Source: Anthoceros angustus (lineage: Eukaryota > Plantae > Anthocerotophyta). From it: a stretch of DNA of 64,000 nt. Below, piece after piece: positions 11,321 to 50,959 of this stretch. The DNA lies in contig MU008158.1 of the NCBI GenBank assembly GCA_010909165.1, positions 1,699,478 through 1,763,477 on the forward strand, read 5' to 3'. The first letter of the stretch is position 1. The number at the start of each line of letters is the position of its first letter. The translations under genes and the position numbers were made by a program. The notes beneath the pieces were generated by a model. It saw only the letters and a list, made by a program, of their open reading frames with translations, did not search any database and was not told where the DNA came from.

Positions 11321-11707
11321 CAGCCACTGGACGATCGGTCGAGCGCATAAAATATGGAAGGCTTCGAGAAAAGGGCCTGGAGGCTGGGGTCCGCAGTCCG
11401 TCGACCGGTCGCTGTAAACCCCTCCAACTTGTATGCATGTACGCCGGCTGCCGGCAAAGGGGTGCACGTTGCACGGAGAGGAGTTTGGTCAAAATATACT
11501 AGGGCTTATCTTCGTAAAAAACAAAGATACACTAACACTACTCAGCAAGTCGGTGGGGATTGAGGATTTCGGAGGCCGGCCGGCCGGCCGGCGCCCGAAC
11601 GGTGTTCACGCTTAGCATTTCAGGACTCCCATATCGCTCTCGCTCTCGCTCTCGCTCCAGGCAATCGAGCGACATTGTCGCTACGCAGGCTCTCGGAAGA
11701 AATCGAC

Positions 11708-22591: not shown

Positions 22592-23984
<1,393 letters not shown>

Positions 23985-26900
23985 GTTAGGGAAGCTCCTG
24001 TATCGTATATGCTATGGAGCTTTTTGATCCTACGTTGGCCGTATTACTAGGCTTGGCTGGTTGGTACCACGTAAGGTTGCGCAGGAGATGGTTGTTTTTC
24101 TTGTGAGTCTCATGGGCCTTTCACATATAACAAAAAGGACAACCTCAATACAATATTTGCAATGAGTCTTGTAAAGAGTGATCAAGCCGTAATTTAAGGT
24201 TTCTCTTCGTTCACCACACGCTCCATCACAACGCACTCTTGACTGCTACATACCCATGAAAAACCTCACTATTAACATGGTATAGGCCCTGGTTCCTTTA
24301 GCCTTTCCGATATTCGTAATATTGAAATTAAGTATCATAAATGATATCATGACAGGCCATACCTCTTGCCCGTCATCAAGCCTTGCACGCCTAGGTTGCA
24401 TCCCGCGACCTTGGCTATAGCTAGATTCAAGTGAGTGCATTCTCATGCACCCTTCCTCCTTTTGCTCCATGTGGTGGAAGTAAAGTGAGGAGCTCTTTCC
24501 AGTAGACTATCTATATCATCACTAGGGATTACAAGCTTATGTATTACAAGTATGTTTTGCAAAGTGATGGAAGGGTCTTGAGGAAGCTTGGTTAGTGTTG
24601 AATTTCAATGATGTATGAGTGAAGGGTCATGTGTTTTGCCCTTAAGTGAAACGACATCTCAGTTGGGACCCTCGGCGGGACTTGTTGTAGTGTAGCAAGC
24701 TGGCTTAGTTCATCGATCCTATGTGGCATGTGTAGATTGCTTAGCTAACCTCTTTGTTTATCGGTTGGGTCGAACTTGCAATTTCTTGATAAGGTGTGGT
24801 GATACGATTCTGGTGGTGTGTTTAGGCGCTGTTTAGGGCTGAAACAAAGGCTCGGAGCATGCTGCCACGCTGAACACACACTCACTAGCTTCAAGTTGTT
24901 GTGTCTGTGTCAGGATTTCTTGCATGGATTGAAGTTTTGAAGGAGAACATGTTTGCAGGAAGGTCTATTGTGCATGTATTGAGGTTCAAAAAGTACCACA
25001 ATATCTCCAACTTACGAGGAAGCTTGTCCAAAAGGGGATGACGAAGAGATTTAGCAGCTGTTGACGTGGGCTTCCGTGCCCAATGAGTGAGCTCCTTGTC
25101 TTGATTAGGGGATCTACGGGCCCAGGGCGCACAACATAGGGTGTGCCAACTGTGAGGCAAGGGCACCTCACAAACGTAGGAGGAGGTGGTCAGCCATCTT
25201 TAGCACTCTCCTCTAGAAACAATAAGTGCCTCTCAGCAAACAGGATAATTTGGGAAGATAGGATTTGCATGAAGGGATCAGCCCTACGATCCAAGCAAGC
25301 CATGATCCCTTCTGCCCAAGCTGTGACTTAAAGCCAGGAGCCGCATATGCTTGCTCAAGCGGAGAGTACCAACCAGCTCCTCTTCCTCATGTTGGTGTGA
25401 TTGGAAGTTGTCCTACCATCCTATTGTGGATGCTCCTCATCACGTCCTACTAGCGTGTGCTGTTGTCTCACCCGCATGCCTCCTTGCCGGTGGGCAAACA
25501 AGGTTGCCCAAGTGGGCAAACAAGGTTGCCCAAGTGGGCAAACAAGCTTGCACAATCTCACGTTGGGTGCTCAAACTTGTTTGCACACTCATCTCGTGCT
25601 GACTGTTTTGTAACAAAAACGCTTGTATGGGATGAGTGGCGAACATGCACAAATAGTATACAAATCAGCCCGATTATCTTCACCTCTTCAAAGCGCGGTG
25701 CTCTACCATGGATGCGGCACATTGTGACCAAATGAACATGTAGGGTGTGGATTTGAACACCACATTAAAATTAGCAAACACCCTTAAAAAAAAGCCTAAA
25801 AAAAAGCGAATACATATTTTTGCCCAAAAAAAAATGGGATTTCAGCCATAACCCTTTTTGCGGAGAAACTACTTTCTACCGGATGTTTGTTAGGAAGCTC
25901 TGTATCGATATGCTATGGAGCTTTTTGATCCCTCGTTGGCCGTATTACTAGGCTTGGTTGGTACCACGTAAGGTTGCAGAGATGGTTGTTTTTCTTGTGA
26001 GTCTCATGGGCCTTTCACATATAACAAAAAGGACAACCTCAATACAATATTTGCAATGAGTCTTGTAAAGAGTGATCAAGCCGTAATTTAAGGTTTCTCT
26101 TCGTTCACCACACGCTCCATCACAACGCACTCTTGACTGCTACATACCCATGAAAAACCTCACTATTAACATGGTATAGGCCCTGGTTCCTTTAGCCTTT
26201 CCGATATTCGTAATATTGAAATTAAGTATCATAAATGATATCATGACAGGCCATACCTCTTGCCCGTCATCAAGCCTTGCACGCCTAGGTTGCATCCCGC
26301 GACCTTGGCTATAGCTAGATTCGAAGGCTGGGTAGCTGCATTCTCATGCACCCCTTCCTCCTTTTGCTCCATGTGGCTGGAGAAGTAAAGTGAGGAGCTC
26401 TTTCCAGTAGACTATCTATATCATCACTAGGGATTACAAGCTTATGTATTACAAGTATGTTTTGCAAAGTGATGGAAGGGTCTTGAGGAAGCTTGGTTAG
26501 TGTTGAATTTCAATGATGTATGAGTGAAGGGCTGTGTGTGTTTTGCCCTTAAGTGAGAACGACATCTCACAGTTGGGACCCTCGGCGGGACTTGTTGTAG
26601 TGTAGCAAGCTGGCTTAGTTCATCGATCCTATGTGGCATGTGTAGATTGCTTAGCTAACCTCTTTGTTTATCGGTTGGGTCGAACTTGCAATTTCTTGAT
26701 AAGGTGTGGTGATCGATTACGGTGGTGTGTTTAGGGTTAGGGCTGAAACAAAGGCTCGGAGCATGCTGCCACGCTGAACACACTCACTAGCTTCAAGTTG
26801 TTGTGTCTGTGTCAGGATTTCTTGCATGGATTGAAGTTTTGAAGGAGAACATGTTTGCAGGAAGGTCTATTGTGCATGTATTGAGGTTCAAAAAGTACCA

Positions 26901-27052
26901 CAATATCTCCAACTTACGAGGAAGCTTGTCCAAAGGGATGTGAAGAGATTTAGCTTGCTGAGGGCCGTGTGCCCAATGAGTGAGCTCCTTGTCTTGATTA
27001 GGGGATCTACGGGCCCGCACAACATAGGGTGTGCCAACCGTGAGGCAAGGGC

Positions 27053-29811
27053 ACCTCACAAGCGTGGAGGAGGTGGTCACCATCTTTAGCACTCTCCTCT
27101 AGAAACAATAAGTGCCTCTCAAGCAGGATAATTTGGGAAGATAGGATTTGCATGAAGGATCACCCCACGATCCAAGCCATGATCCTTCTCGCCTAAGTTG
27201 TGACTTAAAGCCGAGCCGCATGCTTGCTCAAGCGGAGAGTACCAACCAGCTCCTCTTCCTCATGTTGGTGTGATTGGAAGTTGTCCTACCATCCTATTGT
27301 GGATGCTCCTCATCACGTCCTACTAGCGTGTGCTGTTGTCTCACCCGCACAGCCTCCTATCCGCTTGCCCATGAGCTCGTTGGAAGGAATGCTTGGTTGA
27401 TTAGTGGTCTTGTCAGATAGGTATATGTGTGGGCTTTAGTCGCAAGTTGGATAGCTGCATTCTCATGCACCCCTTCCTCCTTGTGCTCCCTGTGGCTAGA
27501 GAATTAGAGTGAGGAGCTCTTTCCAACAGCCCATTTGTATCATCACTAGGGATTACAAGCTTATGTATTACAAGTGTGTTTTGCAAAGTGATGGAAGAGT
27601 CACGAGGAAGCTTGGCGGTGTTGTCGCCGTGTTGAATTTCATTTATGTATGAGTGAAGGGCTGTCCCTTAAGTGAAAACGACATCTCACATATATTTTTA
27701 ATAGAATTTTCACTACACTAAAATCTTAATACAAGGAGGTAGGCATTCTGAAATTAATCAGGTGTATATTTTCAATAGAATCCTAATTACACTAAAATCT
27801 CAATTCGAAAGAAAGACGAAGAAAAGAATTTTATTAAAGTCCATTAAAGACGGATTTCCGTCATGGGACTTGGTACTTAACAACTTGTACCATGGTATGC
27901 CTAAGCTACTTGCACCAAGGGCATCCATTCCTTTTAAGTACCCCATCTAAGTACCGATCAAAGCGCAGCATGCTTAATAACCATGCTTATAAATGTGTGT
28001 CCATTTGGCCTAAGCCATTTGGACACACAAAGGGTTGGGGCCGGTTGGCCGTTCTGGGATAAACCAAGTACATATTCGCGGCGGCGGCGGCCGCGGCCTC
28101 GACCAATTATAGACCCCTGCGCTGTGGAATGAGGTGCTTTTAACTTCCTTTTCATCGTGAGTTAGAATTGAATGTAGATGGATGTCTCGTCAAATGAGGC
28201 GCGTTCTGTATGCGCCATGTGCTGTCCTCGACTCATTATGTGCACTGTTACGACTTAAATATGCGGCCGGCAGCAAACTTCCACGGAAACGCTTGGCAGA
28301 GTACGATGCTGGATGAGGTGCCAGGCCTGTGCAACGTACCGCATCTGGCTGCAAACTGGACAAAAACGGGTCTTGAGGTGGTGGCGAGCGGAGGACAAAA
28401 TGGTTTGCGGCGGTGTTGTCACGCTCGACCTCACAAGCGTGGGAGGAGGTGGTCAGCCATCTTTAGCACTCTCCTCTAGAAACAATAAGTGCCTCTCGGC
28501 CAAGCAGGATAATTTGGGAAGATAGGATTTGCATGAAGGATCGCCCTACGATCCAAGCAAGCCATGATCCTTTTAAGTGACTTAAAGCCAGGAGCCGCAT
28601 ATGCTTGCTCAAGCGGAGAGTACCAACCAGCTCCTCTTCCTCATGTTGGTGTGATTGGAAGTTGTCCTACCATCCTATTGTGGATGCTCCTCATCACGTC
28701 CTACTAGCGTGTGCTGTTGTCTCACCCGCACAACCTCCTATCCGCTTGCCCATGAGCTCGTTGGAAGGAATGCTTGGTTGATTAGTGGTCTTGTCAGATA
28801 GGTATATGTGTGGGCTTTAGTCGCAAGTTGGATAGCTGCATTCTCATGCACCCCTTCCTCCTTGTGCTCCCTGTGGCTAGAGAATTAGAGTGAGGAGCTC
28901 TTTCCAACAGCCCATTTGTATCATCACTAGGGATTACAAGCTTATGTATTACAAGTGTGTTTTGCAAAGTGATGGAAGAGTCCTGAGGAAGCTTGGCCAG
29001 TGTTGTCAGGCCGTGTTGAATTTCATTTATGTATGAGTGAAGGGCTGTCCCTTAAGTGAAAACGACATCTCACATATATTTTTAATAGAATTTTCACTAC
29101 ACTAAAATCTTAATACAAGGAGGTAGGCATTCTGAAATTAATCAGGTGTATATTTTCAATAGAATCCTAATTACACTAAAATCTCAATTCGAAAGAAAGA
29201 CGAAGAAAAGAATTTTATTAAAGTCCATTAAAGACGGATTTCCGTCATGGGACTTAACTTAACAACTTGTACCATGGTATGCCTAAGCTACTTGCACCAA
29301 GGGCATCCATTCCTTTTAAGTACCCCATCTAAGTACCGATCAAAGCGCAGCATGCTTAATAACCATGCTTATAAATGTGTGTCCATTTGGCCTAAGCCAT
29401 TTGGACACACAAAGGGTTGGGGCCGGTTGGCCGTTCTGGGATAAACCAAGTACATATTCGCGGCGGCGGCGGCGCGGCCTCGACCAATTATAGACCCCTG
29501 CGCTGTGGAATGAGGTGCTTTTAACTTCCTTTTCATCGTGAGTTAGAATTGAATGTAGATGGATGTCTCGTCAAATGAGGCGCGTTCTGTATGCGCCATG
29601 TGCTGTCCTCGACTCATTATGTGCACTGTTACGACTTAAATATGCGGCCGGCAGCAAACTTCCACGGAAACGCTTGGCAGAGTACGATGCTGGATGAGGT
29701 GCCAGGCCTGTGCAACGTACCGCATCTGGCTGCAAACTGGACAAAAACGGGTCTTGAGGTGGTGGCGAGCGGAGGACAAAATGGTTTGCGGCGGTGTTGT
29801 CACGCTCGACC
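27053..29811. repeat. Tandem duplication of a ~1.38 kb unit (27053-28430 / 28428-29811)
   Basis: Near-identical copies; each includes the 3' flank and last codons of the adjacent PPR gene (tcacgctcgacc). Confidence 0.92.
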
Positions 29812-32800
29812 CTTACAACTGCAACAACCAGCTGCAAATCGATGTACACGGTACCCATCCCTTAAAACAATATCTCTCTTTTCAACCCTTGACATAATCT
29901 CCGTGGAAGTGTGGCAGTCACTGCACATGCGTAGATTCTTCGTTACCAGAAGAGGTGCTCCACTTGGAGTGTTCAAAAGACCAAAAGCCAGAGCCAGCTT
30001 TTCAGCATGCCCGCAAAGCGCATCTTCCTTTTCCTTCTCACACACAGGCTTCAACACCAACTTTGTGTGTGGTGCGTGGCCCCCTTCCTGCTTCAGACGT
30101 GCATTCATGCGCTCCACCTTAAACGCAATATCATCTCTGTTTTCTCCCACCACAAATGTATGCACCTGCTTCTTCACCTCAATGCTGGCTACTGCAGGTT
30201 TCTTGTTAGCTCCTGCTGCCGTCCTTTGTTTTTCAATCCTCTCTACATCGGTCCACCTACCTGCATCTGCAAAGGCATTGGCCATGAGCACATATGCCGA
30301 TGCACCCTGAGGTCCAGCTAACAATGCTTTCAAAACACCACATCGCCCTCTCTATATCCCCGTGACTCTTGCAAGCATGCAGCAAAGACGTCAACCCCAC
30401 AACATTGCTTTGGCTCTCACATGATAATAGCATGTTCTCCGCGTCATCTAAGTGGCCTGCCCGCCCAAGAAGATCAATCATGCAATTGTAATGCTCAACA
30501 GTAGGTATGATGCCATGCTGTTCAGCCATGGAATCAAAGTGCTTGCGACCCTCATGCACCAGTCCCTCGTGACTGCATGCTGCTAACAGGCAAGTAAAAG
30601 TAGCATCATTAGGCTGAACACCGGCGATTAACATCTCGTGAAAACAGGCTAGTGCATAGTGACCATCATCACACGTACCACACCCAGCAATGAGGGCATT
30701 CCATGTCACCACATTCTTTGTGGCCAAGCTGTCAAAAACCTGGCGTGAATCTGTCAGTTCTCCACATTTTGCATACATGTCCACCAGGCCGTTGCCCAGC
30801 ACTATGTTATCCAGCTGTCCCATTTCGACAATCTGTGAGTGGAGCTGCCTGCCCTTCTGTAAGGCACCAACGCTTGCACAGGCCTTCAGAAGGCAAGCAA
30901 AAGTAACATGGTTAGCCAAAATCAGGCCCTCTTGCTCCATTTGTGCGTACACAACAAGCGCCTCTTGGCCAAGCCCTTGCTGTGCATACCCACCAATGAG
31001 GGCATTCCATGTCGCCACATCCTTTGTGACCAGGCTGTCAAAAACCTCGCGTGCATCTTTCAGTTCACCACATTTTGCATACATGTCCACCAGGCAGTTG
31101 CCCAACATTACGTTATCCAGCAGTCCTCTTTTCAACAATCTGTGAGTGCAGCTGCCTGCCCTTCTGTAAGGCACCAGTGCTTGCACAGGCCTTCAGAAGG
31201 CAAGCAAAAGTAACATGGTCAGCCACAATCAGGCCTCTGCTCCATTTGTCCATACAGAACAAGCGCCTCTTGGCCCCTTGCTGTGCATACCCCAATCAGG
31301 GCATTCCATGTCACCACATCCTTTGTGGCCAATCTGTCAAAAACCTGGCGTGCATCTTCCAGTTCACCACATTTTGCATACATGTCCACCAGGCAGGTGC
31401 CCAACACTATGTTATCTAGCTGTCCTCGTTCCACAATCTGGAAGTGCAGTTGCCTGCCCTTCGATAAGGCACGAATGCTTGCACAGGCCTTCAGAAGGCA
31501 AGCAAAAGTAACATGGTCAGCCAAAATCAGGCCCTCCTGCTCCATTTGTCCATACAGAACAAGCGCCTCTTGGCCAAGCCTTGCTGCATACCCAGCTATC
31601 AGGGCATTCCATGTCACCACATCCTTTGTGGCCAAGCTGTCAAAAACCTGGCGTGCATCTTCCAGTTCACCACATTTTGCATACATGTCCACCAGGCAGG
31701 TGCCCAACATTACGTTATCCAGCAGTCCTCTTTCCACAATCTGTGAGTGCAGCTGCCTGCCCTTCTGTAAGGCACCAGTGCTTGCACAGGCCTTCAGAAG
31801 GCAAAAGTAACATGGTCAGCCAAAATCAGGCCCTCCTGCTCCATTTGTCCATACACAACAAGTGCCTCTTGGCCAAGCCCTTGCTGTGCATACCCACCAA
31901 TGAGGGCATTCCATGTCGCCACATCCTTTGTGACCAGGCTGTCAAAAACCTCGCGTGCATCTTTCAGTTCACCACATTTTGCATACATGTCCACCAGGGA
32001 GGTGCCCAACGCTATGTCACCTAGCAGTCCTCTTTCAACAGCCTGTGAGTGCAGCTGCCTGCCCTTCTGTAAGGCACCAGCACTTGCGCAGGCATTCAGA
32101 AGGCAAGCAAAAGTAACATGGTCAGCCAAAATCAGGTCCTCTTGCTCCATTTGTCCATACAGAACAAGCGCCTCCTGGCCAAGCCCTTGCTGTGCATACC
32201 CTCCAATTAGGGCCGTCCATGTGACCACATCCTTTGTGGCCAAACTGTCAAAAACCTGGCGCGCATCTTGCAGTTTACCACATTTTGCATACATGTCCAC
32301 CAGGCAGGTCCCCAACATTACGTTCTTCAGCTGTCCTCTTTCCACAATCTGGGAGTGCAGCTGCATGCCCGTCTGTATGGCACCAGCGGTTGCACAGGCC
32401 TTCAGAAGGCAAGCAAAAGTAACATCGTCAGCCATAATCGGGCCTTCCTGCTCCATTTGTTCATACAGAACAAGCGCCTCTTGACCCAGCCCTTGCTGTG
32501 CACAACCAGCTATCAGGGCATTCCATGTCACCACATTTTTTGAGGCCATGCTCTCAAACACTTGGCGTGCATCTTCCAGTTCGCCACATTTTGCATACAT
32601 GTCCACGAGGCAGGTGCCCAACATTACGTTATCTAGCAGTCCCCTTTCCGCAATCTGTGAGTGCAGGTGCCTGCCCATCTGTATGGCACCTGCCTTTGAA
32701 CAGGCCTTCACAAGGCAAGCAAAAGTGACATGGTCAGCCACAATCAGGCCCTCCTGCTCCATTTGTCCATAGACAACAAGTGCCTCTTGCTCAAGCCCTT

Positions 32801-34229
32801 GCTGTGCGTATCCTGAAATCAGGGCATTCCATGTCACCACATCCTTTTTGGGCAAGCTGTCAAAAACGTGGCGTGCATCTTTCAGTTTGCCACATTTCAC
32901 ATACATGTCCACCAGGCAGTTGCCAACCACTATGTTATCCAGCTGCCCACTTTTGACAATCTGTGAGTGCAACTGCCTGCCCTTCAGTATTGCACCAGTG
33001 CTTGCACAGGCCTTCAGAAGGCAAGAAAAAGTAACAGCGTTAGCCACATACAGGCCCTCGTGCTCCATTTGTCCATACAGAACAAGCGCCTCTTGGCCAA
33101 GCCCTTGCTGAGTATACCCAGCAATCAGGGCCGTCCATGCCACTACATTTTTTGTGGCCAAGCTGTCAAATACCTGGCGTGCATCTTCCAGCTCGCCACA
33201 TTTTGCATACATGTCCACCAGGCAGCTGCCAACATACAAGTTAACAGGAATGCCAGTGTGCAACAGATCCGAGTGCACTTGTCTGCCAGACTCCAAGTCG
33301 GTGGCAAATGCACAAGCTTGAAGGGCAGCTGTGAAGACGGGACCATCGGCCTTCACACCTGACCTGCGCATCTCATGGTAGAGTCGTATGGCCTCATTTG
33401 GTTTCCCATGCTTAGCATAAGCAGAGATTATGGAAGACCACATGAAGGCATCTGGTTTGCCTACCCTGGTGAACACATCCATGGCCTCCTGTAGCCTACC
33501 TCCACATGCATACATGCGCAGGATATGGTTCCCCAAGTATGCATTCGACTCGTACCCCAGCTTGACAGTGAGATCATGAACTCGTTTCCCCACGACCAAA
33601 TCCTTCTTAGCTATACACAGCTTTAGCACATCATAAAACAGAGACGGAGCAATAGGAAAGTCCGTCTGCGCCAGAGATTCCAGGGCTCCAACGGCCTCGA
33701 TAAGCTTGCCCTGCTGACATAGCGTGCTCACGGTTACGACCCACATTGCCGATCCTGCAAGCCTGCCAGGCTCAGGCTTGTACGGAGGGCTCGACTTGGA
33801 AGGAGAGACACCATGACCCATCTGCATGTCCAAGGACCTGAGCTGCTCATCCACCCAAGCTGGCTTGAACAAGTTGTCTAACCACAGGACCTCCCCGCCG
33901 CAGCCCTTACGCCGGAAGTCAGGCGAACGGGAGCTCTTCTTATCTCGCCTGTTGTCCCACCACATGCTAGGGTCCAGAAAAAATTGTTGCCACAAGAGCT
34001 CCTGGTCCTGCTCCTTTCGATGCCCATCGCTGGAGAATCGTTCCCCGCCCACAGATTTTCTCGGAAGTGGAAGTTCTGGGTGCTTTTCACTGCTGCCCCT
34101 GGAGGCCTGGTTGTTTTCCAGCGGTTGACTCCCTAAGGCGAGATGAGCGGCAACCCCTCGGACAGTCCCTGCATACCCACCAATTTGTTGGGTCCACAAC
34201 GGGTCCGGTTGCCATATTGTGGCCATCAT
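29800..34229 (-). CDS. PLS-class PPR protein A with N-terminal PDF-like motif and DYW:KP (GRP-type, ends GRA) domain; ~32 PPR motifs; several frameshifts as assembled
   Basis: ORF pieces 31794-34262, 31219-31737, 31113-31295, 30257-31186 and 29800-30333 are collinear PLS repeats followed by E1/E2, KPAVASIEV, HAEKLA, CSDCH and CCSCKGRA*. Confidence 0.88.
33840..34001 (-). other. PDF-like motif (OSB-type ssDNA-binding repeat) in PPR A
   Basis: ELLWQQFFLDPSMWWDNRRDKKSSRSPDFRRKGCGGEVLWLDNLFKPAWVDEQL. Confidence 0.8.
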
Positions 34230-34814
34230 CCTGTGACCGCTCTCGGAAGGTAAGGTGCGCAACGAACCAAAACTATTTGGACCGTGCTAGGATGGCTTGC
34301 ATGACCTCACCGCCATTTGCAATCGCAGTTTGGTTTTCCATTATCTACCGCTGGCAGGGATACCAGAAACGTTAGCAGTGTGCCCCAGTCAAAATCTCCG
34401 TGACATGTATGTAGACATAGAACGGAACTCGTTTGAAGCAGAAGCCCTGGTCTGCCTGATGGAAGCCAGCGAGTTAACTTTTCTGTTGAGGAAAATCGTG
34501 TAGTTGTAGAGACCGTGTAGTTCTACGGACCAGAGCCAGTTGGGGCTGGACAACAGAAACCACCACCTACACTATCACAAGCCTAGGCTTGCCTAGAACC
34601 AAATTTGGTGAACCATCTAAGAATCTCTTCAGAGGTCATGGCCGTCGAGCAGTAGGGGGATGCCAGATGCCTTACTCCTGGCGTTCTTCTGTGCAAGTGG
34701 ATTGCAGCTGGCTGCAAAGGCCCGGGGAGAGCCTGCCTGTGCCAGGGGCGCTGTCAAGAGCTTTAGCTTGTGCTGAAAGTACTGGACATGCCATGAGCAG
34801 GCCCAGAACCTCCG

Positions 34815-37160
34815 TCAATATCCGTCCCTACATGAACAAGACCCATTTAGGAACCGATGTACCCGATGTGCGTCTCTTACTATGATCTCTCGCTTCTCAA
34901 CGTGTGACATTATCTTGGAGCTATCGTGACAGTCATTGCACATGCGAAGATTTTTGGTGACAAGCAAAGTTGTGCCATCTGGTGTATTCAGCAGACCATA
35001 GGCCAAGGCTAGTTTCTCAGCATGCCCACACAGTGCGTCCTCCTTTTCCTCCTCAGAAATGGGCCTCAACACCAGCTGCGTCTGTGGCACGTGGCCCCCT
35101 TCCTCCTTCAACCTCATATTCATGCTCCTCACCTTGGATGATATGTCAGACCTGTCTTCCCCTACTGTAAACTCGTGCACTTCACTCTTAACTTCGATGC
35201 ATGCCTTTGCAGGCTTCTTCCTAGCACCTGCTGACTTTCTCAACCTCTCTATCCTATCCACATCGTCCCACATGCCTGCATTCGCATAAATGTTCCCCAA
35301 CAGCGAGTAAGGACTTGCATCCTCTGCTCGCAGTTCTACGAGATGCTCAAAACATCGTCTTCCACGCTCTACATCACCGTGGCTTTTACACGCGGTCAGC
35401 AACGCTGTCCAGCCTACCACCTTATCCAAAAACGATGTGGTTTGCAGAAGGTGTTCAGCCTCATCCAGCTTGCCTGACCGACCAAGGAGATCAACCATGC
35501 AGTTGTAGTGAGAATCGGTGGGCATAATCCCACAGTCCTCAACCATCATCTTGAAAAACCGACGGCCCTCATGCACCAGCCCAGAATGACTGCATGCCGC
35601 AAGGAGACACAGGAAGCTTGTCTCATTTGGCTTCACACCATCCTCAAGCATCTGCTCGAAACAACGAATTGCTGTCTCACCGTCACTATGTTCAGCATAG
35701 CCATTAAGGAGAGCGTTCCATGTCACCACATCTCTCCTAGGTAGGCTGTGGAACACTTTGTGAGCATGCTCCAAGCTCCCACATTTTGCATACATGTCCA
35801 CCAGGCAGCTGGCAATGAAGCCATCAGCTTCAAGACCGCTATCGTGGATCTGCGAATGAAGCTTCTGCCCTTGCTGCAGCGCCCCCACACTAGCGCATGC
35901 TTGAAGCAGGCACACATATGCAACACGATCACTGGGACTGATGCCCTCACGTTGCATACTGGCATACAGAGCCAGGGCTTCACGCCCAAGCCCCTGCTTA
36001 GAATAGGCTGCAAGCATGGATGTCCATGTCACCACATTTCTTATGGGCAATCTGTCGAATACTTCGCGAGCATCTTCCAGCCTCCCACATTTGGAGTACA
36101 TATCCACCAGACAGCTGCCAACAAAAACGTCAGCTTCAAGGCCTCTTTCACGAATCTGCAAGTGAAGCTGCTTCCCCTCCTGAAGGGCTCCCAGACTGGC
36201 ACAGGCTTGAAGAAGGCACACAAACGTGACATGATCAGGCCTCGTTGTGCCCTCCTGTTGCATACTTGCGTGCAGGGCCAGAGCCTCTCGCCCGAGCCCC
36301 TGCTGAGTGTATCCGGCCATCATGGTATTCCATGCCACCACATCCCTCCTGGGCAGGCTGTCGAACACCTTGCGAGCGTCACCCAAGCTGCCGCACTTAG
36401 CATACATGTTGAGCAGACTGGTGGCCACGAAAATATCCCCCTCTCCACCACTCGCCCTTACATCAGCATGCACCTGCTTGCCAGAGCACAGGTCATGTGC
36501 TGAGGCACAGGCCGTCAGGGCTGCCACGAAGATACGATTATCAGGCTCCACACTCGCAGCCTCTCGCATCCGCCGATACAGGATTATAGCCTCCTTAGGC
36601 TGTCCATGTCGGGTATGCGCAAAGATGATGGAGGACCACATGTAGACATCGGGGCTGGACACTTGGGTGAAGACCTGCACTGCCTCTTCCAATTTGCCAT
36701 GACAAGCATACATCCCGATCATGTGGTTGGCCAGGAATGCATTGCATTCATACCCACTAACGACAATAAGACCATGAACCCGCCTCCCCAACACGAGGTC
36801 CTTCCGCGCCACGCACCTCTTTAACAGTCGATACAGGAGACCGGTATTAACCCGGCATCCTCGCTGCTGCACCAGAACATCCAACGCATCCACAGCCTCG
36901 CCCAGCTCCGCCTCCTCGCATCGCTTAACCAAGGCCTCAACCGCCGAGCCTGGACTTGGTCCCTGCTCAATCCCACGCGGTAGCGCAGCATCCCACTGGG
37001 CAGGCTCCGAGTTGCTGAGCCCCAGCTGCTCCTTGAAGGCTCTATGGTTCTTCAATCCTCTCTTGTCCCAACAAACGTTGCGAGAAGAAGACGGGACCCC
37101 CAAGATGCGCGAGTCCGGAAGTGGCAGGCTGGGCGGAGGCAAAACCAGCGGCATCGCCAT
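34815..37160 (-). CDS. PLS-class PPR protein B with DYW:KP (DRH-like, ends DGY) domain; 14 PPR motifs; intronless
   Basis: PLS triplets, P2L2S2, E1/E2, KPAKACIEV, HAEKLA, CNDCH, CSCRDGY*; Ser/Pro-rich N-terminus compatible with an organellar transit peptide. Confidence 0.93.
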   Translation of the reverse strand: MAMPLVLPPPSLPLPDSRILGVPSSSRNVCWDKRGLKNHRAFKEQLGLSNSEPAQWDAALPRGIEQGPSPGSAVEALVKRCEEAELGEAVDALDVLVQQRGCRVNTGLLYRLLKRCVARKDLVLGRRVHGLIVVSGYECNAFLANHMIGMYACHGKLEEAVQVFTQVSSPDVYMWSSIIFAHTRHGQPKEAIILYRRMREAASVEPDNRIFVAALTACASAHDLCSGKQVHADVRASGGEGDIFVATSLLNMYAKCGSLGDARKVFDSLPRRDVVAWNTMMAGYTQQGLGREALALHASMQQEGTTRPDHVTFVCLLQACASLGALQEGKQLHLQIRERGLEADVFVGSCLVDMYSKCGRLEDAREVFDRLPIRNVVTWTSMLAAYSKQGLGREALALYASMQREGISPSDRVAYVCLLQACASVGALQQGQKLHSQIHDSGLEADGFIASCLVDMYAKCGSLEHAHKVFHSLPRRDVVTWNALLNGYAEHSDGETAIRCFEQMLEDGVKPNETSFLCLLAACSHSGLVHEGRRFFKMMVEDCGIMPTDSHYNCMVDLLGRSGKLDEAEHLLQTTSFLDKVVGWTALLTACKSHGDVERGRRCFEHLVELRAEDASPYSLLGNIYANAGMWDDVDRIERLRKSAGARKKPAKACIEVKSEVHEFTVGEDRSDISSKVRSMNMRLKEEGGHVPQTQLVLRPISEEEKEDALCGHAEKLALAYGLLNTPDGTTLLVTKNLRMCNDCHDSSKIMSHVEKREIIVRDAHRVHRFLNGSCSCRDGY

Positions 37161-38079
37161 GTGCCCCTCTCCCCTCCCTCACTCAGGCAGAAGAGAATCC
37201 CAGGCTGCGCTCCAGTGTGGGCGGCGTCCTGGAAACGATGCAGATACAACAACGGCCCAGCAAGCCAGCCTCATACCCCTGACTCTCCCGCCCATCCAGG
37301 ACGGTCATCCCGTGAGCAATCTTGTGCCACCGGGCATGGAAACCAGCAACTGTCTACTGGTAGGACAAGTGTGTCTCCATCCTACCACATTCCGATATAT
37401 CACAACCAAATACGAACGGTGGCCGGGTCTAGGCTGCAGCTGCTGCTGCCAACCATTCCCACGCTGCTCCTTGGAGCATCTCTTGCGGGGTGCTGGCTAA
37501 CCGCTTCCAGCTCTTGCTGGGCATCATAGACACGTTGAGTCCACACCTCCCGACAGAAGTCGACCTTTTGCATTTGGCATCGTTTGATGGACATACAAAG
37601 CATATACATATCTAAGGTTGCAAGCATGGTGTCACCTGAATGAGGCTTACTTTTCTTTCCGATACGATTCAGGTGACAAAGTAGGTACCTAGTCTGGTAG
37701 GTACTGCCAACAACGTACGTATGTATTTGCTAGGGCATGGTTTGACAGCATGGGAAGGTACAACAGATATCATCAGTCTTGATGGTTCCAAGCATGGTGT
37801 GCAGCATGGGAGGAGATCAAATGTCCGTTGTCTGTGCAAACGAAGTGTGTGAGCTGATGGCCGAACAATGCATCTGCGGAATTGAGGAATCATCACTTGT
37901 TCACGAAGAGCAGACATAGAATTCATCTGGGGCGCTACTTCAAAAAAAGAGACTTGTGGGTTAGAACTTGCTTACCGCGTCATGAAAGCGCGAGCTGTGA
38001 CCTCGTGACTGACCGGCCGCACGTCCGAATCATCTCGTCAAATAGACTTGCGGAAAGCTGGTCGAATAGGAGCGCAAGC

Positions 38080-39525
38080 ATGGGAGGATGGATTCGGCTT
38101 CTGGTCGGGGCCCTGGTGTCCTTTTGTTCACTGCAGCTTTGCGCAGCCTACGCCCCAGGGGACGTCGTGCCCATGTCGCGAAAGGGCCAGTATCACACTG
38201 TAAGTGTTTCTCTGAACGGGTCAGACGACCGAGCTTCCGAATTCGGCCCCAGTTTAGGACCTTGCTGAGTGTGTGCTTCCTTGCAGTACAGAACAGAGTG
38301 GCAGGATCAACTAGGACGGCACTGTCCGCGTTTTGGTATAAACAGGGAGGTCAGTCAGGCACCACATCGTCCAGCTGCGCAACCCTGAAGCGTCGCTCGG
38401 TCAAACTCGTTGCTCACTTGCTTTTGATGTGAACTCCAGGTGGTGGTGCCTGTTCCCAAGCCAGTCGGCTACACCGGATCGGATGAGGTCAAATTGTGAG
38501 TTAGGTTTTCCTTGTAGGGTAGAGGCAGTTCATGGTCGCAAGACGGATGGAAAATGCTGTTGTCTTTGATCTGTGACCTTCGCAGTTTTCTTTGAGTTTT
38601 GCAGAGCCCTCCAGTTTGGGACTGAGAAATTTTCCACACCTTGGCTGCTAGTCTATGGCCGGAGAAGCCCAAATGTAACTATGATAGATGTAACCCTGGT
38701 GAGTTTGTTCCTGTGCAGCCAGTTTTATCAGCACTCGCCGGTTATGCTTTCTAGTCCAGATTGTCGGAAGCTCATGGTCATAACACATGCAGAAACACAC
38801 TGGAGGAGACTTGGTAGGTGTGACAGCAAAAGTTGGGGACGTGCCTGAGAAGTGTATGTCCCTAATGTACCGGATGTTCTGGACTTTGCAAGCTTGTGAC
38901 ATGACGTATTCTTGTGAGCTACTAGTACGTCTTTGAACTGGTTCCACTCGATGGTTGCAGATCTTAACGAGCATCCAGACGTGAAGATGGAATTTTGGGA
39001 CTCGAACAGGTGGCCCAAGCACCTTCTCGTTCATTACGTCTGGTAATATACGCTTTCCTCCCTCGGTCTCCAGGGTGTCCATTGCGGTGATCTATGCTGC
39101 TTACTCACTTCTGTATCCTGGGCTCCCCATGTAGGGAGGATAAATCGGAAATCGATGTGGAGGGTGGCTTTTACGTTCTTTTTGGTTCTGGTAAAGAGAT
39201 TCTTGCCTCATCTTTCAGTTAAGTTCATTTTGAGAGCAATATCGGAGGGCACCTGGGAATGTGCCTTGCTTATCTTATTCTAATAGTCTTGTGAACTTAC
39301 ATTGCAGCGTTTGTTTTCTTCCTAATCACTTCACTCACCATACTCCAGTCGTCACAGGAGAAACTAGCCAGGTTAGAAGTGTTTTTATATATTGTCACAC
39401 TGAGAATGTGCTTGTGCTTCCTCTGCATTCTTCCATTATCGATGCTTGCTCTCTCCTCTTGCAGATTTGTGAAGGACAATGTGATAGAAACGGGCATGCC
39501 GGTGCCCGTCGAGAAGGTTGAATAA
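38080..39525 (+). CDS. Conserved plant membrane protein, NPU-like (No Primexine and plasma membrane Undulation), multi-exon
   Basis: Signal peptide + AYAPGDVVPMSRKGQYH..RTEWQDQLGRHCPRFGINREV..PKPVGYTG...FWDSNRWPKHLLVHY.WE.KSEIDV..GFYVLFGS..TM..LQSSQEKLARFV, recalled as similar to Arabidopsis NPU. Confidence 0.75.
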
Positions 39526-40138
39526 GACTAGTTTGCTGCCGAGGTGTTCACGTATGCGTACCTGTAATCTGCATGGTGACAAGCTCTTTCAAATGCATTG
39601 GTCTCCTGCACTGGGAGCTGTGCGTTCCCCGCATCCTCTTTCTCTGATTTTGCGATCAGGGACACTGGCACGTTACGTGGAACATCCGGATCAAAGTCCT
39701 CTAATATTTTTGCTCGTTTAAAATATGAGAAAACATCGAAATTCCTTTGTACCGGACCTGCCGCAACCACTTCGGCCGGCGGCTGTTCCTTTGGAAGGCG
39801 TTGTCCCTTCGAGCTTATCACGTGCTAAGACAGGGCGACAGTTGAGACCAGCAAAGGGAGATGAGCTTGCGAGAATCGATGTGTCGGTTTGAAACTTTTC
39901 TTGTGTTACATGAATTGCAATACGGCGGGCATTCCCCCCTGGAAGGTGTTGGAGTATGTAGCTATACAGTACAATCAATACATACCTATCTGTCCAATCC
40001 TGTCGACCCCAGCCGCAGCCAATCGGTTAGTTGCCATGCTGATCATTGTTCACAGTCCCTGTCTGACGGCGCCCACATCCGGTGAAATGACACCATTTCA
40101 CCTTTAAGGGCCCCGGTTGTTTTTCTAGATCTTCGTGC

Positions 40139-42739
40139 TCACGGTCGGCCCTTACAACTGCAACAACCAGCGGCGAATCGATGCGCACGGTACCCATCCC
40201 TTACAACAATGTCTCTCTTTTCAACCCTTGACATAATCTCTGTGGAAGTGTGGCAGTCACTGCACATGCGTAGATTCTTCGTTACCAGCAGAGGTGTTCC
40301 ACTTGGAGTGTTCAAAAGACCAAAAGCCAGAGCCAGCTTTTCAGCATGCCCGCAAAGCACATCTTCCTTTTCCTTCTCACACAGTGGCTTCAACACCAAC
40401 TTTGTGTGTGGTACGTGGCCCCCTTCCTGCTTCAGACGTGAATTCATGCTCTCCACCTCCTGCGCAATATCATCTCTGTTTTCTCCCACCGCAAACGTAT
40501 GCACCAGCTTCTTCACCTCAATGCTCGCTAATGCAGGTTTCTTGTAAGCTCCTGCTACCGTCCTCTGTGTTTCAATCCTCTCTACATCGGTCCACCTACC
40601 TGCATCTGCATAGGCATTGGCCATGAGCACATATGCCGATGCACTTTGAGGCTCCAGTCTAACGAGACTTTCAAAACACCGTGTCGCCCTTTCTACATCC
40701 CCGTGACTCTTGCAAGCATTCAGTAAAGACGTCAACCCCACAACATTGCTTTGGCTCCCACATGACAATAGCATGTTCTCTGCCTCATCTAAATGGCCTG
40801 CACGCCCTAGAAGATCAATCATGCAAGTGTAATGCTCAATAGTAGGTTTGATGCCATGCTGTTCAACCATAGAATCAAAGTGCTTGCGACCCTCGTCCAC
40901 GAGTCCCTCATGACTGCATGCTACTAAAAGACAAGTGAAAGTAGCATCATCTGGCTGAACACCAGCGACTAACATCTCCTCAAAGTAAGCTAGTGCTTTG
41001 TGACCATCATCACAAGTCCCACACCCAGCTATCAGCGCCGTCCATGTCACCACATTTTTTGAGGCCAAGCTGTCAAAAACCTGCCGTGCCTCTTTCAGAT
41101 CGCCACATTTTGCATACATGTCCACCAGGCAGGTGCCCAGCATAACGTTACCTAGCAGTCCCCTTTCAACAATCTGTGAGTGCAGGTGCATGCCTGTCTG
41201 TATGGCACCAGCGCTTGCGCAGGCCTTCAGAAGGCAAGCAAAAGTAACATGGTCAGCCACAATCAGACTCTCCTGCTCCATTTGACCATACACGACTAGC
41301 GCCTCTTCCTCAAGCCCTTGCTGTGCATATCCCGAAATCAGGGCATTCCATGTCACCACATCCTTTCTGGGCAAGCCGTCAAAAACTTGGCGTGCATCGT
41401 TGAGTTTGCCACATTTCGCATACATGTCCACCAGGCAGTTGCCCAACACTATGTTATCCAGCTGCCCACTTTCCACAATCTGCGAGTGCAGCTGCCTGCC
41501 CTTATGTATGGCACCAGTGCTTGCACAGGCCTTCAGGAGGCAAGCAAAAGTAAGAGCGTTAGCCACAAACCGGCCCTCTTGCTCCATTTGTCCATACAGA
41601 ACAAGCGCCTCTTGGCCGAGCCCTTGCTGGGCATACCCACCAATCAGGGCCGTCCATGCAGCTATGTTTTTTGCGGCCAAGCTGTCAAAGGCCCGGCGTG
41701 CATCTGCCAGGTCGCCACACTTTGCATACATGTCCACCAGGCAGGTGCCAACAAACAAGTTGGGAGGAATGCCACTTTGCAAAAAATCCTGGTGCACTTG
41801 TCTGCCAGATTCCAAGTCAGCTGCGAATGCACAAGCTTGAAGGGCCGCTACAAAGACGTGCGCATCCTCCTTCACGCCTGACCTACGCATCTCATGGTAC
41901 AGTTGTATGGCCTTGTTAGGCTTCCCATGTTTAGCATGTGCGGAGATTATGGAACCCCACATGAACGCATCTGGTGTGCCTACCCTGGTGAACACATCCA
42001 TGGCCTCCTGTAGCCTACCTCCACATGCATACATGCGCAAGATATGGTTCCCCAAGTATGTATTGGATTGGTACCCGAGTTTGACAGTGAGATCATGAAC
42101 TTGTTGCCCTACAACCAGATCCCTCTTAGCTGTACATAGTTTTAGCACAGTGTAAAACAGAGACACAGAAATAGGACAGTGTGCCTGCGCCAGAGCCTCC
42201 AAGGCTCCAACGGCTTCAGTAAGCTTCCCCTGCTGACATAAAGTGCTCACGGTTACAGGAGTTAAGATGCTCATTTCCGATCCTGCACGCCTGCCAGGCT
42301 TGGGCTTATCTGCAAAGCTCCATTTGGAAGGAGAGGCACCATGACCCATCTGGACATCCCAAGAAACGAGCTGCTCATCCACCCAAGCTGGCTTGAACAA
42401 GCTGTTTAACCAGAGGACCTCGCGAGATCCTTTACGCCGGAAGTCAGGCGAACGGGAGCTCTTCTTATCTCTTCTGTTGTCCCACCACATGGTAGGGTCC
42501 AGAAAGAATTGTTGCCACAAGAGCTCCTGCTCGTGGCAACGCCCATCGCTGGAATGTCCTTGCCCACCTACAGATTTTTTCGGAAGTTGAACTGCTGGGA
42601 TACTTACACTGGAGGCTTGGTTGTCTCCCAGCGGTTGACTCCCTGAAGTGAGGTGAGCGGGAGCTGCTCGTAGAATCCCTGAACACCCACCACCTTCTTG
42701 TTGTGTCCACAACGGGTCCGGTGGCCATACCGTGGCCAT
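40139..42739 (-). CDS. PLS-class PPR protein C with N-terminal PDF-like motif and DYW:KP GRP-type domain; 14 PPR motifs; intact and intronless
   Basis: KPALASIEV, HAEKLA, CSDCH, CCSCKGRP*; close paralog of PPR A. The ORF is open to 42808; the ATG at 42739 aligns with the PPR A start. Confidence 0.93.
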   Translation of the reverse strand: MATVWPPDPLWTQQEGGGCSGILRAAPAHLTSGSQPLGDNQASSVSIPAVQLPKKSVGGQGHSSDGRCHEQELLWQQFFLDPTMWWDNRRDKKSSRSPDFRRKGSREVLWLNSLFKPAWVDEQLVSWDVQMGHGASPSKWSFADKPKPGRRAGSEMSILTPVTVSTLCQQGKLTEAVGALEALAQAHCPISVSLFYTVLKLCTAKRDLVVGQQVHDLTVKLGYQSNTYLGNHILRMYACGGRLQEAMDVFTRVGTPDAFMWGSIISAHAKHGKPNKAIQLYHEMRRSGVKEDAHVFVAALQACAFAADLESGRQVHQDFLQSGIPPNLFVGTCLVDMYAKCGDLADARRAFDSLAAKNIAAWTALIGGYAQQGLGQEALVLYGQMEQEGRFVANALTFACLLKACASTGAIHKGRQLHSQIVESGQLDNIVLGNCLVDMYAKCGKLNDARQVFDGLPRKDVVTWNALISGYAQQGLEEEALVVYGQMEQESLIVADHVTFACLLKACASAGAIQTGMHLHSQIVERGLLGNVMLGTCLVDMYAKCGDLKEARQVFDSLASKNVVTWTALIAGCGTCDDGHKALAYFEEMLVAGVQPDDATFTCLLVACSHEGLVDEGRKHFDSMVEQHGIKPTIEHYTCMIDLLGRAGHLDEAENMLLSCGSQSNVVGLTSLLNACKSHGDVERATRCFESLVRLEPQSASAYVLMANAYADAGRWTDVERIETQRTVAGAYKKPALASIEVKKLVHTFAVGENRDDIAQEVESMNSRLKQEGGHVPHTKLVLKPLCEKEKEDVLCGHAEKLALAFGLLNTPSGTPLLVTKNLRMCSDCHTSTEIMSRVEKRDIVVRDGYRAHRFAAGCCSCKGRP
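42369..42527 (-). other. PDF-like motif (OSB-type ssDNA-binding repeat) in PPR C
   Basis: ELLWQQFFLDPTMWWDNRRDKKSSRSPDFRRKGSREVLWLNSLFKPAWVDEQL. Confidence 0.8.
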
Positions 42740-46101: not shown

Positions 46102-47428
46102 TTATGAATATGCTAGCTCTTTTATACTTTTTATGCCCCAGTTTGAATTATGCGGAAATGTATGGTTCCAAAGCTTATGGGCGATTATCTTTTGAACAAT
46201 TTCACTTGGATGATATTGATCAAACCAAGGATATTTTTTTGTGCCAAGACACGCCAGCTTCTCACTAACGCAAGCAAATTGGCTATTGAGAGGTCCATCG
46301 CCACAACATGCTGCATTTTTTTCAAATCCGTGCTTTGTAATATTAGACATAATATCTTTTAATATGTTATATGTTGGTCCAAAGGAAAAATACAAGTCCC
46401 TAAAACCTTCACGACCAATGAATATCTCATTTAACTTACTCATAATAGCATCATTATAGTGCTCCATGTCGGCATTCACAAAATCTATGCATTCACCATG
46501 TGGAAGATACCTGAATCTGTATAATATATTTGGCATACATCCCATATTTGCAAGACCCATGATGGCAAACTTTATTGCGCCCATTTCATGTAGCTTCTTG
46601 ATCCCATCCGATAAATTTTGAAAAAGAGAAATAGTAAAATTGTTCCTAGTTTCTTCATAATTAGTAGCCTGCAACTGGCACCCTTCACTTGGATAATGCA
46701 TGAATGCCCAATCACTATAGCCAACTGAAATAAAAATGATTGATTCTTTCAAATGATTTTTAACCACATTGGAACCTAATATTTGTTCAAGATTTCGAAT
46801 TACTACTTGTTCCATTAATATTATTTGATCATGAAAGGGAATAACATCCCCAATTGATTAAGTCCCATTTTAAGCAATAACCCAGCACCAGCAGAGGCAA
46901 AATTTATGCCTAGTGATACGATACTGGATTGATTACGTGATTCGAAGGGAGATTGGTATCCACTCAACTTGAGATACTTGGTGGCTTATATGTCTATTGC
47001 AAGCTTACCATCAGTATATCTTCCAGTCGAAATATATGTATCAAAGTTTCTGCCATGTGGACCATGATTAGCTTTATAATCAACTTGACGATTTACATTA
47101 TTCCCAACATCTACTGATGAATCGTCAAATACGTAAAGTGCTTTAACGTTGTGAGAAGCATCATTATCATTATTCATAAGGTGATCTTGCGCTTTAGATC
47201 TTGCACGAGGAAGATTGCAAGAAGCATGTATATTTGGTATGCTGCTCAATATCATGCTAGAAAGTAACATATATATAAATAATTTGTAGAATGAGAAGCA
47301 TCAGTATCATTATCCATAAGGCGATCTTGCGCTTTAGATCTTGCACGAGGAAGATTGCAAGAAGCATGTACATTTGGTATGCTGCTCAATATCATGCTAG
47401 AAAGTATAAATAATTTGTAGAATTTCAT
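46102..47428 (-). pseudogene. GDSL esterase/lipase pseudogene, intronless, AT-rich
   Basis: ALYVFDDSSVDVGNN (block I, G->D), TGRYTDGK, in-frame stop at ~46986, GINFASAGAG, frameshift, GCMP, ACCGDGP, WFDQYHPSE (block V); a ~140-bp duplication of the signal-peptide region breaks the frame. Confidence 0.8.
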
Positions 47429-49585: not shown

Positions 49586-50959
49586 ATGAATTGCTGTGTC
49601 AGCAATGGGAATCACGACCAGGCGAAGGGGGGGAACGGCGTGGCCTCCGTAACCAGTTTGTCCGCCCGGGGTCGGAGGGCTATCAGCCCGTTTTCGCCCT
49701 ACATCCAAAAGGCTACCGAGTCCAAGACGAACCTGTGGTCTCCTGAAAATGTGGACGGCTTCTTCAACATGGCGACAGCCGAGAGCGTGCTGTCCTTCGA
49801 CCTGATTCACAGCAAGATAAAGTCTTGCAGGGAGGTGCCGGCTACAGTAGGGCTTTATGCTAACTTCCAGGGAGGGCAGAGGCTGCGGCAAGCCATTGCA
49901 AAGATGATGGAGAGAACGTTCATGGGGGTGACGGTTGATCCCGCCCATATTTGCATTTCCAGCGGTGTGACTGCTGTTTTGGACCTCTTCTTCTTCGGAA
50001 CCTGTGATGTGGGAGATGCCTGTCTGATTCCCGCTCCGTACTTCCCTGCCTTCGACAATGACATGGACATCAGGAACCAGGTTAAGCCTATTCCCATCCA
50101 ACCTGCTGACACTTGCACCTACATCCCAACTGCCAAGGAGATGGAGGCAGCTGTGGCGGAGGCAGAGAAGAAAGGGGTGCGATCCAGAGTGCTCTTGGTG
50201 ACTAACCCCGGGAATCCTTTGGGCACTCTCTACCCTGAGGCTACTTTGAAGGAACTGCTAATCTGGGCTGTCAAGAGGGGCCTGCATGTGTTGTCTGATG
50301 AGATATATGCTAATTCTAAGTTTGGGGCTTCAGCGGAGGAGTTTGTGAGCATGGAGAAGGTGGCCAGCAATGCCATTGCTGAGGGTCTGTTGCCAGCTCA
50401 CCTAGTGGCAGAAAGAGTCCACACAGCTTATGGGATGAGCAAAGACTTTGGGATGAACGGGTTCCGTGTGGGATGTCTTCACACCAAGAACAAGGATCTG
50501 CTCAAGTTCTGGCAGAACATGGGTATGTTCTCTGCCGTCTCCAATGACACCCAGCATGCCCTAGCCGTGATGCTGGAGGATGAGGCGTTTGTGGACTCGT
50601 ATGTGGCTGAAAACAACAAGCGTTTGAAGCACTCGTATGAGGTCCTGACCGCAGCATTGGAGGCTGCCAGTCTCAAGTACATGCCAGCATGTGCTGCTAT
50701 GTTTTGCTGGTTGGACCTCAGGAGCTTCCTGAGAGAACCTACCTTTGAGGCAGAGTTTCAGCTGTGGGAGGAGGTCCACAAGGAGCAGAAGGTGGTGCTC
50801 ACTCCTGGTGAAGCTTGCCACTATGCCGAGCCGGGCTTTTTCCGACTTTGCTATGCATCCATGCCTCCTGACCACCTCAAGGTGGCCTGCTCACGGCTAG
50901 CTGCGTTTGTGGAGAAGAGGAGGAGAAAACGGAAGGCTGTTTCCAGCATAGACTTGTAG
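49586..50959 (+). CDS. ACC synthase-like PLP-dependent aminotransferase (class I/II), intronless CDS
   Basis: IPAPYFPAFD, LVTNPGNPLG, SDEIYA, PLP-Lys motif YGMSKDFGMNGFRVG, EPGFFRLCYA. Confidence 0.88.
   Translation: MNCCVSNGNHDQAKGGNGVASVTSLSARGRRAISPFSPYIQKATESKTNLWSPENVDGFFNMATAESVLSFDLIHSKIKSCREVPATVGLYANFQGGQRLRQAIAKMMERTFMGVTVDPAHICISSGVTAVLDLFFFGTCDVGDACLIPAPYFPAFDNDMDIRNQVKPIPIQPADTCTYIPTAKEMEAAVAEAEKKGVRSRVLLVTNPGNPLGTLYPEATLKELLIWAVKRGLHVLSDEIYANSKFGASAEEFVSMEKVASNAIAEGLLPAHLVAERVHTAYGMSKDFGMNGFRVGCLHTKNKDLLKFWQNMGMFSAVSNDTQHALAVMLEDEAFVDSYVAENNKRLKHSYEVLTAALEAASLKYMPACAAMFCWLDLRSFLREPTFEAEFQLWEEVHKEQKVVLTPGEACHYAEPGFFRLCYASMPPDHLKVACSRLAAFVEKRRRKRKAVSSIDL

What the first reader, a model, noticed from the sequence alone, without database searches (positions are those of the whole stretch)
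33840..42527. ssDNA-binding PDF motif fused to DYW:KP (U-to-C-type) PPR editing factors
Seen: PPR A (33840-34001) and PPR C (42369-42527) each carry, in frame and without an intron, a ~54-aa block W..FF.DP..WWDNR.DKKS.RSPDFRRK....VLWL....P.WV..QL ahead of the PLS array. Paralog B lacks it. The block is almost invariant between A and C while its flanks diverge, which suggests purifying selection. Established: this pattern matches the PDF motif that mediates ssDNA binding in plant organellar OSB proteins, and DYW:KP domains are associated with U-to-C editing. Inference: the protein joins an ssDNA-binding module, a sequence-programmable RNA binder and a deaminase-fold catalytic domain. It could tether editing to nucleoids, transcription bubbles or R-loops (co-transcriptional editing), or even act on DNA. 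I am not aware of this architecture being characterised.
Basis: partly seen in the sequence, partly recalled or inferred. Interest (0 to 1): 0.9.

Follow-up and report, generated by a model that had tools for sequence, protein, structure and literature searches.

The report
OSB-type PDF domain on PPR editors

Summary
Observation confirmed. Genes A and C carry an in-frame 54-55 aa PDF domain ahead of the PLS repeats; B lacks it. A profile built only from OSB-type proteins scores it 64 and 60 bits (shuffles at most 3.6), dN/dS is 0.15 against 0.93 and 0.64 in the flanks, and it folds (pLDDT 92) on a disordered linker. Gene C is an intact 866-aa PDF-PLS-E-DYW:KP (GRP) frame with all catalytic residues; A is frame-broken as assembled; reads could not be checked. 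The scan noted this fusion before on other DNA of this genome (124 notes; in the eight I could read the copies were called broken). Added here: the same PDF-PLS front end occurs in Marchantia MpPPR_60 and two Riccia proteins (no E/DYW; lineage without organellar editing), in a Sphagnum canonical DYW protein, and in lycophytes and ferns. PDF domains also occur in phage-like proteins beside exonuclease genes. So the module is not specific to U-to-C editing, or to editing at all. Best reading: a single-strand-binding tether that holds PLS proteins near nucleoids and nascent transcripts (inferred, untested). No paper found; three key papers were not available.

The parts
40139..42739 (-). Gene C: intact single-exon ORF, 866 aa from the ATG shared with A (an in-frame ATG at 42808 would add 23 aa, not conserved in A): leader - PDF - linker - PLS array - E1/E2 - DYW:KP (GRP)
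42530..42739 (-). C leader, 70 aa, Ser/Gly/Pro-rich, near-neutral evolution (dN/dS 0.93); presumed organelle targeting region, not predicted with a tool
42368..42529 (-). PDF domain of C (54 aa), helix - strand - PDF - strand - helix
42257..42367 (-). Linker of C, predicted disordered (pLDDT under 50 over 23 residues); length varies widely among homologues
40745..42256 (-). PLS array of C: N-cap helix pair plus 14 motifs (L-S-P-L-S-P-L-S-P-L-S-P2-L2-S2) with ordinary code pairs (TN, ND, TD)
40544..40744 (-). E1/E2 motifs of C
40139..40543 (-). DYW:KP domain of C: KP box, HAE, the lysine equivalent to K88, CxxC, GRP end
   Evidence: motif definitions
29800..34229 (-). Gene A: PDF-PLS-E-DYW:KP (GRA end) with an expanded array of 306-nt repeat units; reading frame broken as assembled by seven frame-changing indels and one 3-nt loss (near 31800, 31586, 31290-31130, 30317, 30312)
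33840..34004 (-). PDF domain of A (55 aa)
29800..30204 (-). DYW:KP domain of A, out of frame with the PDF as assembled
34815..37160 (-). Gene B: intact 781-aa PLS-E-DYW:KP gene (HAE, KP box, DGY end) without a PDF domain; a natural control

Best explanation
Gene C encodes an organellar RNA-editing factor of the hornwort GRP subtype: the PLS array picks an RNA site and the DYW:KP domain most likely converts U to C (established for designer proteins of this subtype, inferred for C). In front sits an independently folding PDF domain on a flexible linker (shown by sequence and model). The PDF is an old accessory part of a lineage of PLS proteins in seedless land plants, present with or without a deaminase (shown). 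Its most likely job is a sequence-independent single-strand tether, probably to ssDNA as in OSB proteins, that concentrates the protein at organellar nucleoids where its transcript emerges, so that the PPR array finds its target early (inferred). It is not part of the editing chemistry and can be lost.
For: Family membership: 601 proteins at E<=0.001, among them annotated OSB1 and OSB3 proteins with SSB folds; OSB-only HMM 64/60 bits; all 19 columns conserved in at least 85% of the OSB-type rows are identical in A and C except one K-to-R change; model matches an SSB+PDF Atlas cluster at TM 0.91. PDF of AtOSB1 is sufficient for ssDNA binding, and OSB1/2 prefer ssDNA to dsDNA or RNA (PMC6963530; PMC4166229). 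Two phage-like PDF proteins follow exonuclease genes, one with DnaB downstream. Selection on the block. Disordered, length-variable linker; pTM falls from 0.75 to 0.58 when the PPR part is added. Many PPR proteins associate with nucleoids (PMC10226603). Independent of editing: Marchantia MpPPR_60 and Riccia proteins keep PDF (79% identical between genera, PPR part 72%, leader 28%) with no E/DYW, in a lineage lacking editing. Dispensable for catalysis: designer KP2/KP3 edit U to C with a synthetic array and no native N-terminus (PMC9478123); B has no PDF.
Against: No binding or localisation data exist for any PPR-linked PDF. A single PDF may bind weakly (OSB2 works as a tetramer). The loop before the PDF tripeptide departs from the OSB consensus in A and C (NP to SS, KH to RR). 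Targeting of C to an organelle was not tested and its leader is not a textbook transit peptide. Expression and the reading frame could not be checked with reads.
Confidence: 0.5

Rival explanations
1. The PDF acts on the RNA itself: a non-specific single-strand binder that adds avidity or melts structure next to the PPR site, doing in cis part of what separate helper proteins do in seed plants.
For: It sits at the N-terminus of the array, which faces the 5' side of the bound RNA, on a flexible linker. Found in seedless plants, which lack MORF proteins (PMC11094755; PMC13386178); no seed-plant PDF-PPR appeared among the hits whose source I could name. Fusions of RNA-binding helper domains (RRM, MORF) to PPR proteins are known.
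Against: The only measured preference of PDF-bearing proteins is ssDNA over RNA. Moss and designer editors work without helpers. The seed-plant absence rests on 150 + 120 listed hits, not a census.
Confidence: 0.27
2. The PDF is a protein-protein or self-association module (for example for oligomers or for recruiting a partner), not a nucleic-acid binder in this setting.
For: Many PDF-PPR proteins lack a deaminase and may need partners; OSB2 is a tetramer; PDF occurs in tandem arrays of up to 13.
Against: The aromatic and basic residues conserved in OSB PDFs are all kept; the isolated OSB1 PDF binds ssDNA; Marchantia has no editing deaminase to recruit.
Confidence: 0.14
3. The protein acts on DNA: PDF and PPR array hold ssDNA and the DYW:KP domain changes a base in it (for example dU back to dC).
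For: Designer PPR arrays can bind ssDNA with the same code (PMC11094755); PDF is an ssDNA binder in OSB.
Against: GRP-type domains edit RNA in designer proteins; PDF is kept in proteins with no deaminase at all; no report of DYW activity on DNA was found.
Confidence: 0.03
4. The PDF is a passenger copied along during the mass duplication of PPR genes and has no present function.
For: Lost in B and possibly in P0173; degenerate in P0096 (40 bits, PDF tripeptide changed); A and many other copies in this genome are broken.
Against: dN/dS 0.15 between A and C; more conserved than the PPR part between Marchantia and Riccia; kept across liverworts, mosses, lycophytes, ferns and hornwort-type genes.
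Confidence: 0.06

Closest known systems
OSB1-4 organellar ssDNA-binding proteins (OB fold + 1-3 C-terminal PDF motifs; Zaegel et al. 2006, as reviewed in PMC6963530 and PMC4166229)
   Same: Same ~54-aa PDF domain by profile (64/60 bits) and predicted shape (TM 0.91).
   Different: No OB fold; PDF is N-terminal and single; it is joined to a PLS-E-DYW:KP editor. Reviews describe PDF only in OSB and as confined to green plants; here it is also on PPR proteins and phage-like proteins.
Hornwort DYW:KP editing factors, GRP subtype (PMC9478123, PMC11845758)
   Same: PLS array, E1/E2, KP box, HAE, K88-equivalent, CxxC, GRP end; intronless, in a local cluster.
   Different: Carries an N-terminal PDF domain that these papers do not mention; designer KP2/KP3 used only the C-terminal part.
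RRM-PPR, MORF-PPR and similar helper-domain fusions (PMC13386178)
   Same: An extra nucleic-acid-binding or helper domain fused to a PPR protein.
   Different: Different fold; the survey of 364 genomes does not mention PDF or OSB (0 occurrences).
Marchantia polymorpha MpPPR_60 and Riccia orthologues
   Same: Leader - PDF - linker - PLS repeats (66-71 bits).
   Different: No E or DYW domain; lineage without organellar editing; no functional paper found.

Membership tests
PDF motif (OSB type) | About 50-aa motif with Pro-Asp-Phe signature and the OSB consensus | tested here: met
   OSB-only HMM 64.2 and 59.9 bits over positions 2-53 of 54; shuffles at most 3.6; conserved columns kept
PDF motif (OSB type) | Same fold as OSB PDF motifs | tested here: met
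   Predicted models only: TM 0.91, rmsd 1.2 to an SSB+PDF Atlas cluster; no solved structure of the family found
PDF motif (OSB type) | Binds ssDNA, in preference to RNA and dsDNA | not testable with these tools
   Shown only for Arabidopsis OSB1/2
OSB protein family | N-terminal or central SSB-like OB fold | tested here: not met
   No PF00436 hit in A, B or C, while OSB hits have it; these genes are not OSB members
PLS-class PPR protein | Array of P, L, S motifs ending P2-L2-S2-E1-E2 | tested here: met
   (gene C, gene B)
DYW:KP, GRP subtype | KP box in place of PG box; HAE; K88; CxxC; GRP end | tested here: met
   Gene C has all (definitions). A ends GRA and is out of frame; B ends DGY
DYW:KP, GRP subtype | U-to-C editing activity on an organellar transcript | not testable with these tools
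   Shown only for designer proteins; natural KP activity unknown (PMC11845758)
DYW:KP, GRP subtype | Expressed, organelle-targeted, full-length protein | tested here: inconclusive
   PDF with canonical DYW (P0105 Sphagnum), with E only (lycophytes, ferns), with no E/DYW (Marchantia, Riccia); KP without PDF (gene B)
PDF-PPR as one ancient lineage | PPR-linked PDFs form one clade | tested here: inconclusive
   26 of 27 fall in one branch (92/89) with 4 OSB rows; single clade not rejected (AU p 0.30 and 0.79) but not shown; only 55 columns

The most novel reading that the evidence does not exclude
A phage-derived ssDNA-binding domain was fused to PLS proteins at the base of land plants and anchors them to the displaced DNA strand of organellar transcription bubbles or R-loops, making editing and other RNA processing co-transcriptional; in the extreme form the DYW:KP domain could also act on ssDNA (that part about 0.03).
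Probability: 0.2. Interest if true: 0.85.

Novelty: new variant of a known kind. Interest (0 to 1): 0.6.

Why it matters
Natural U-to-C editors have never been shown to work; all assays used designer proteins without the native N-terminus. Gene C is an intact natural GRP-type candidate with an unannotated folded domain (no Pfam model, no solved structure), and gene B next to it is a PDF-less control. The Marchantia protein MpPPR_60 gives a genetic handle in a model plant without editing, so the domain's role can be tested apart from catalysis. If PDF tethers PPR proteins to nucleoids, it would give a physical link between organellar DNA transactions and RNA maturation, an open question named in PMC10226603, and a small part that could be tried in synthetic PPR editors.

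Tried and rejected
1) A degenerate PDF remnant in B (a WD-R-K stretch near its start): -3.7 bits, matched or beaten by 225 of 500 shuffles; rejected. 2) A solved structure for the domain: none by sequence, best structural Z 3.1. 3) Atlas feature search gave only a sub-threshold phage gp49 lead (0.80); not used. 4) Viral contig scans for more phage neighbours: alignment too variable, single protein found nothing; PHROGs has no family for the PDF proteins. 5) Widespread indel error in this assembly as support for 'A is an assembly artefact': the apparent splits in neighbouring GT47, dioxygenase and transferase genes are GT-AG introns, so no support; A's status stays open. 7) Zaegel 2006, Gerke 2020 and Gutmann 2020 are not held, so a passing mention there cannot be excluded. 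8) No target prediction was run, as the organelle genomes of this species are not available here.
Full report
What is there. The region holds three intronless PPR genes on the - strand: A (34229 to 29800), B (37160 to 34815, 781 aa) and C (42739 to 40139, 866 aa). Neighbours are ordinary intron-bearing plant genes. The GRP end marks a subtype described for hornworts (PMC9478123), so the genome is probably a hornwort; this is inference. C is one open frame: 70-aa leader, the block, a 37-aa linker, an N-cap helix pair, 14 PLS motifs with ordinary code pairs, E1/E2 and a DYW:KP domain with KP box, HAE, the K88-equivalent lysine, CxxC and GRP (definitions). A has the same front end but a longer array of 306-nt units, up to 96% identical to each other, and its frame is broken by seven frame-changing indels and a 3-nt loss, most within about 700 bases of the most similar units. 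The breaks are indels rather than base changes to stop codons, and dN/dS against C stays 0.21 and 0.46 in the 3' part, so A is either a recent pseudogene or an assembly error in repeats.

The block is real and selected. It lies in frame at 33840-34004 in A and 42368-42529 in C. It is 91% identical between them against about 61% in the flanks, with dN/dS 0.15 against 0.93 and 0.64. B has no trace of it.

It is a PDF domain. A search of 1.84 billion representatives with the block alone gave 601 proteins at E<=0.001. Of the best 150, 71 carry an OB fold; checked examples are annotated OSB1 and OSB3 or hit PF00436. A profile from their 164 PDF motifs only scores C 64.2 and A 59.9 bits, shuffles at most 3.6. 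The AlphaFold model has pLDDT 92 and matches an SSB+PDF Atlas cluster at TM 0.91 and three PPR clusters of 57-127 members at TM 0.84-0.94. No solved structure or Pfam model covers it. With the first PPR motifs attached, both parts stay confident but 23 linker residues fall under pLDDT 50 and pTM drops to 0.58; linker length varies widely among homologues. The domain therefore looks like a bead on a string, not a cap packed on the array.

The fusion is old and not tied to U-to-C editing. Sixteen of the 150 top hits, plus P0001 and P0172, have one to three PDFs before a PPR array. Named sources are Adiantum, Ceratopteris, Pteridium (transcript-derived), Diphasiastrum, Selaginella and Sphagnum. 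Their ends differ: GRP-type KP in P0096 and P0172 from independent runs, canonical DYW in Sphagnum P0105, E motifs only in most lycophyte and fern proteins. A profile search added Riccia sorocarpa, Riccia fluitans and, through its cluster, Marchantia polymorpha MpPPR_60: short leader, PDF at residues 37-89 (66-71 bits), PLS repeats, no E or DYW. Marchantiid liverworts are the one land-plant group without organellar C-to-U editing (PMC10226603), and U-to-C editing is confined to hornworts, lycophytes and ferns. Between Marchantia and Riccia the PDF is 79% identical, the PPR part 72%, the leader 28%. So the PDF is maintained where there is no editing at all. In a tree of 55 columns, 26 of 27 PPR-linked PDFs fall in one branch with four OSB rows; one origin is not rejected (AU p 0.30 and 0.79) but not shown.

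Outside plants. Two phage-like proteins of about 185 aa end in a PDF scoring 76-80 bits and lie directly after exonuclease genes, one with DnaB further down; two viral Atlas clusters match at TM 0.73 and 0.67. This is where phage recombination modules keep single-strand-binding or annealing genes (my knowledge), and fits a DNA-binding ancestry. A review states that PDF is confined to green plants (PMC4166229).

How it most likely works. Shown: architecture, family, selection, distribution. Established: OSB1's PDF is enough for ssDNA binding and OSB1/2 prefer ssDNA to RNA; designer GRP domains edit U to C without any native N-terminus; many PPR proteins associate with nucleoids. Inferred: the PDF is a weak, sequence-independent single-strand tether that keeps the protein near organellar DNA and nascent transcripts, while the PLS array and DYW:KP do the ordinary RNA job (0.5). 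Rivals: an RNA avidity or unfolding aid (0.27), a protein-protein module (0.14), a passenger (0.06), action on DNA (0.03).

Novelty. Ten literature searches found PDF only in the OSB context; a 2026 survey of editing-factor domain fusions in 364 genomes does not mention it. Three key papers were not held. Earlier notes of this scan reached the same identification on other DNA of this genome; I tested it again independently. What this window and session add is an intact copy (C) beside a PDF-less paralogue (B), the editing-free liverwort proteins, and the phage context. Verdict: a new variant of known parts, real, apparently undescribed, function untested; interest 0.6.

Noticed in passing
P0294 (Marchantia MpPPR_60), P0189, P0201 (Riccia): PDF + PLS proteins without E/DYW conserved in liverworts that lack organellar editing; a ready genetic test of the domain.
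   Followed up: partly
L003:5001-5558 and L004:691-1251: Phage-like 185-aa proteins ending in a PDF domain, directly after PD-(D/E)XK exonuclease genes (DnaB downstream in L003); no PHROG or Pfam family; candidate unrecognised ssDNA-binding or annealing proteins.
   Followed up: partly
P0003, P0007, P0010, P0011, P0016 and others: Proteins made almost only of 4-11 tandem PDF domains with no OB fold or PPR, from unnamed sources (leaders look eukaryotic); lineage and function unknown.
   Followed up: no
window 34815-37160: Gene B is an intact DYW:KP gene with an unusual DGY end, neither GRP nor DRH.
   Followed up: partly
window 29800-30309 vs 40139-40648: dS between A and C is 0.12 over E2-DYW but 0.31-0.42 elsewhere, which hints at gene conversion or a later swap of the 3' end.
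   Followed up: no
window 23552-29811: Non-coding tandem segmental repeats of about 1.9 kb and 1.4 kb at 94-97% identity just downstream of gene A.
   Followed up: no
L006:8001-10506: In an independent short-read assembly a PDF-bearing 162-aa ORF stops just before a PPR-E-DYW ORF, so split or broken copies may be real in related species.
   Followed up: partly
window 19132-21282: Intronless SAD/SRA-domain ORF (716 aa) with a long Pro-rich N-terminus; no SET domain hit in this frame.
   Followed up: no
window 7088-13354, 46102-46815, 49586-50959, 62775-63320: Ordinary plant genes: GT47 exostosin, 2-oxoglutarate dioxygenase, BAHD transferase, GDSL lipase, aminotransferase class I/II, glycosyl hydrolase 63.
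   Followed up: no
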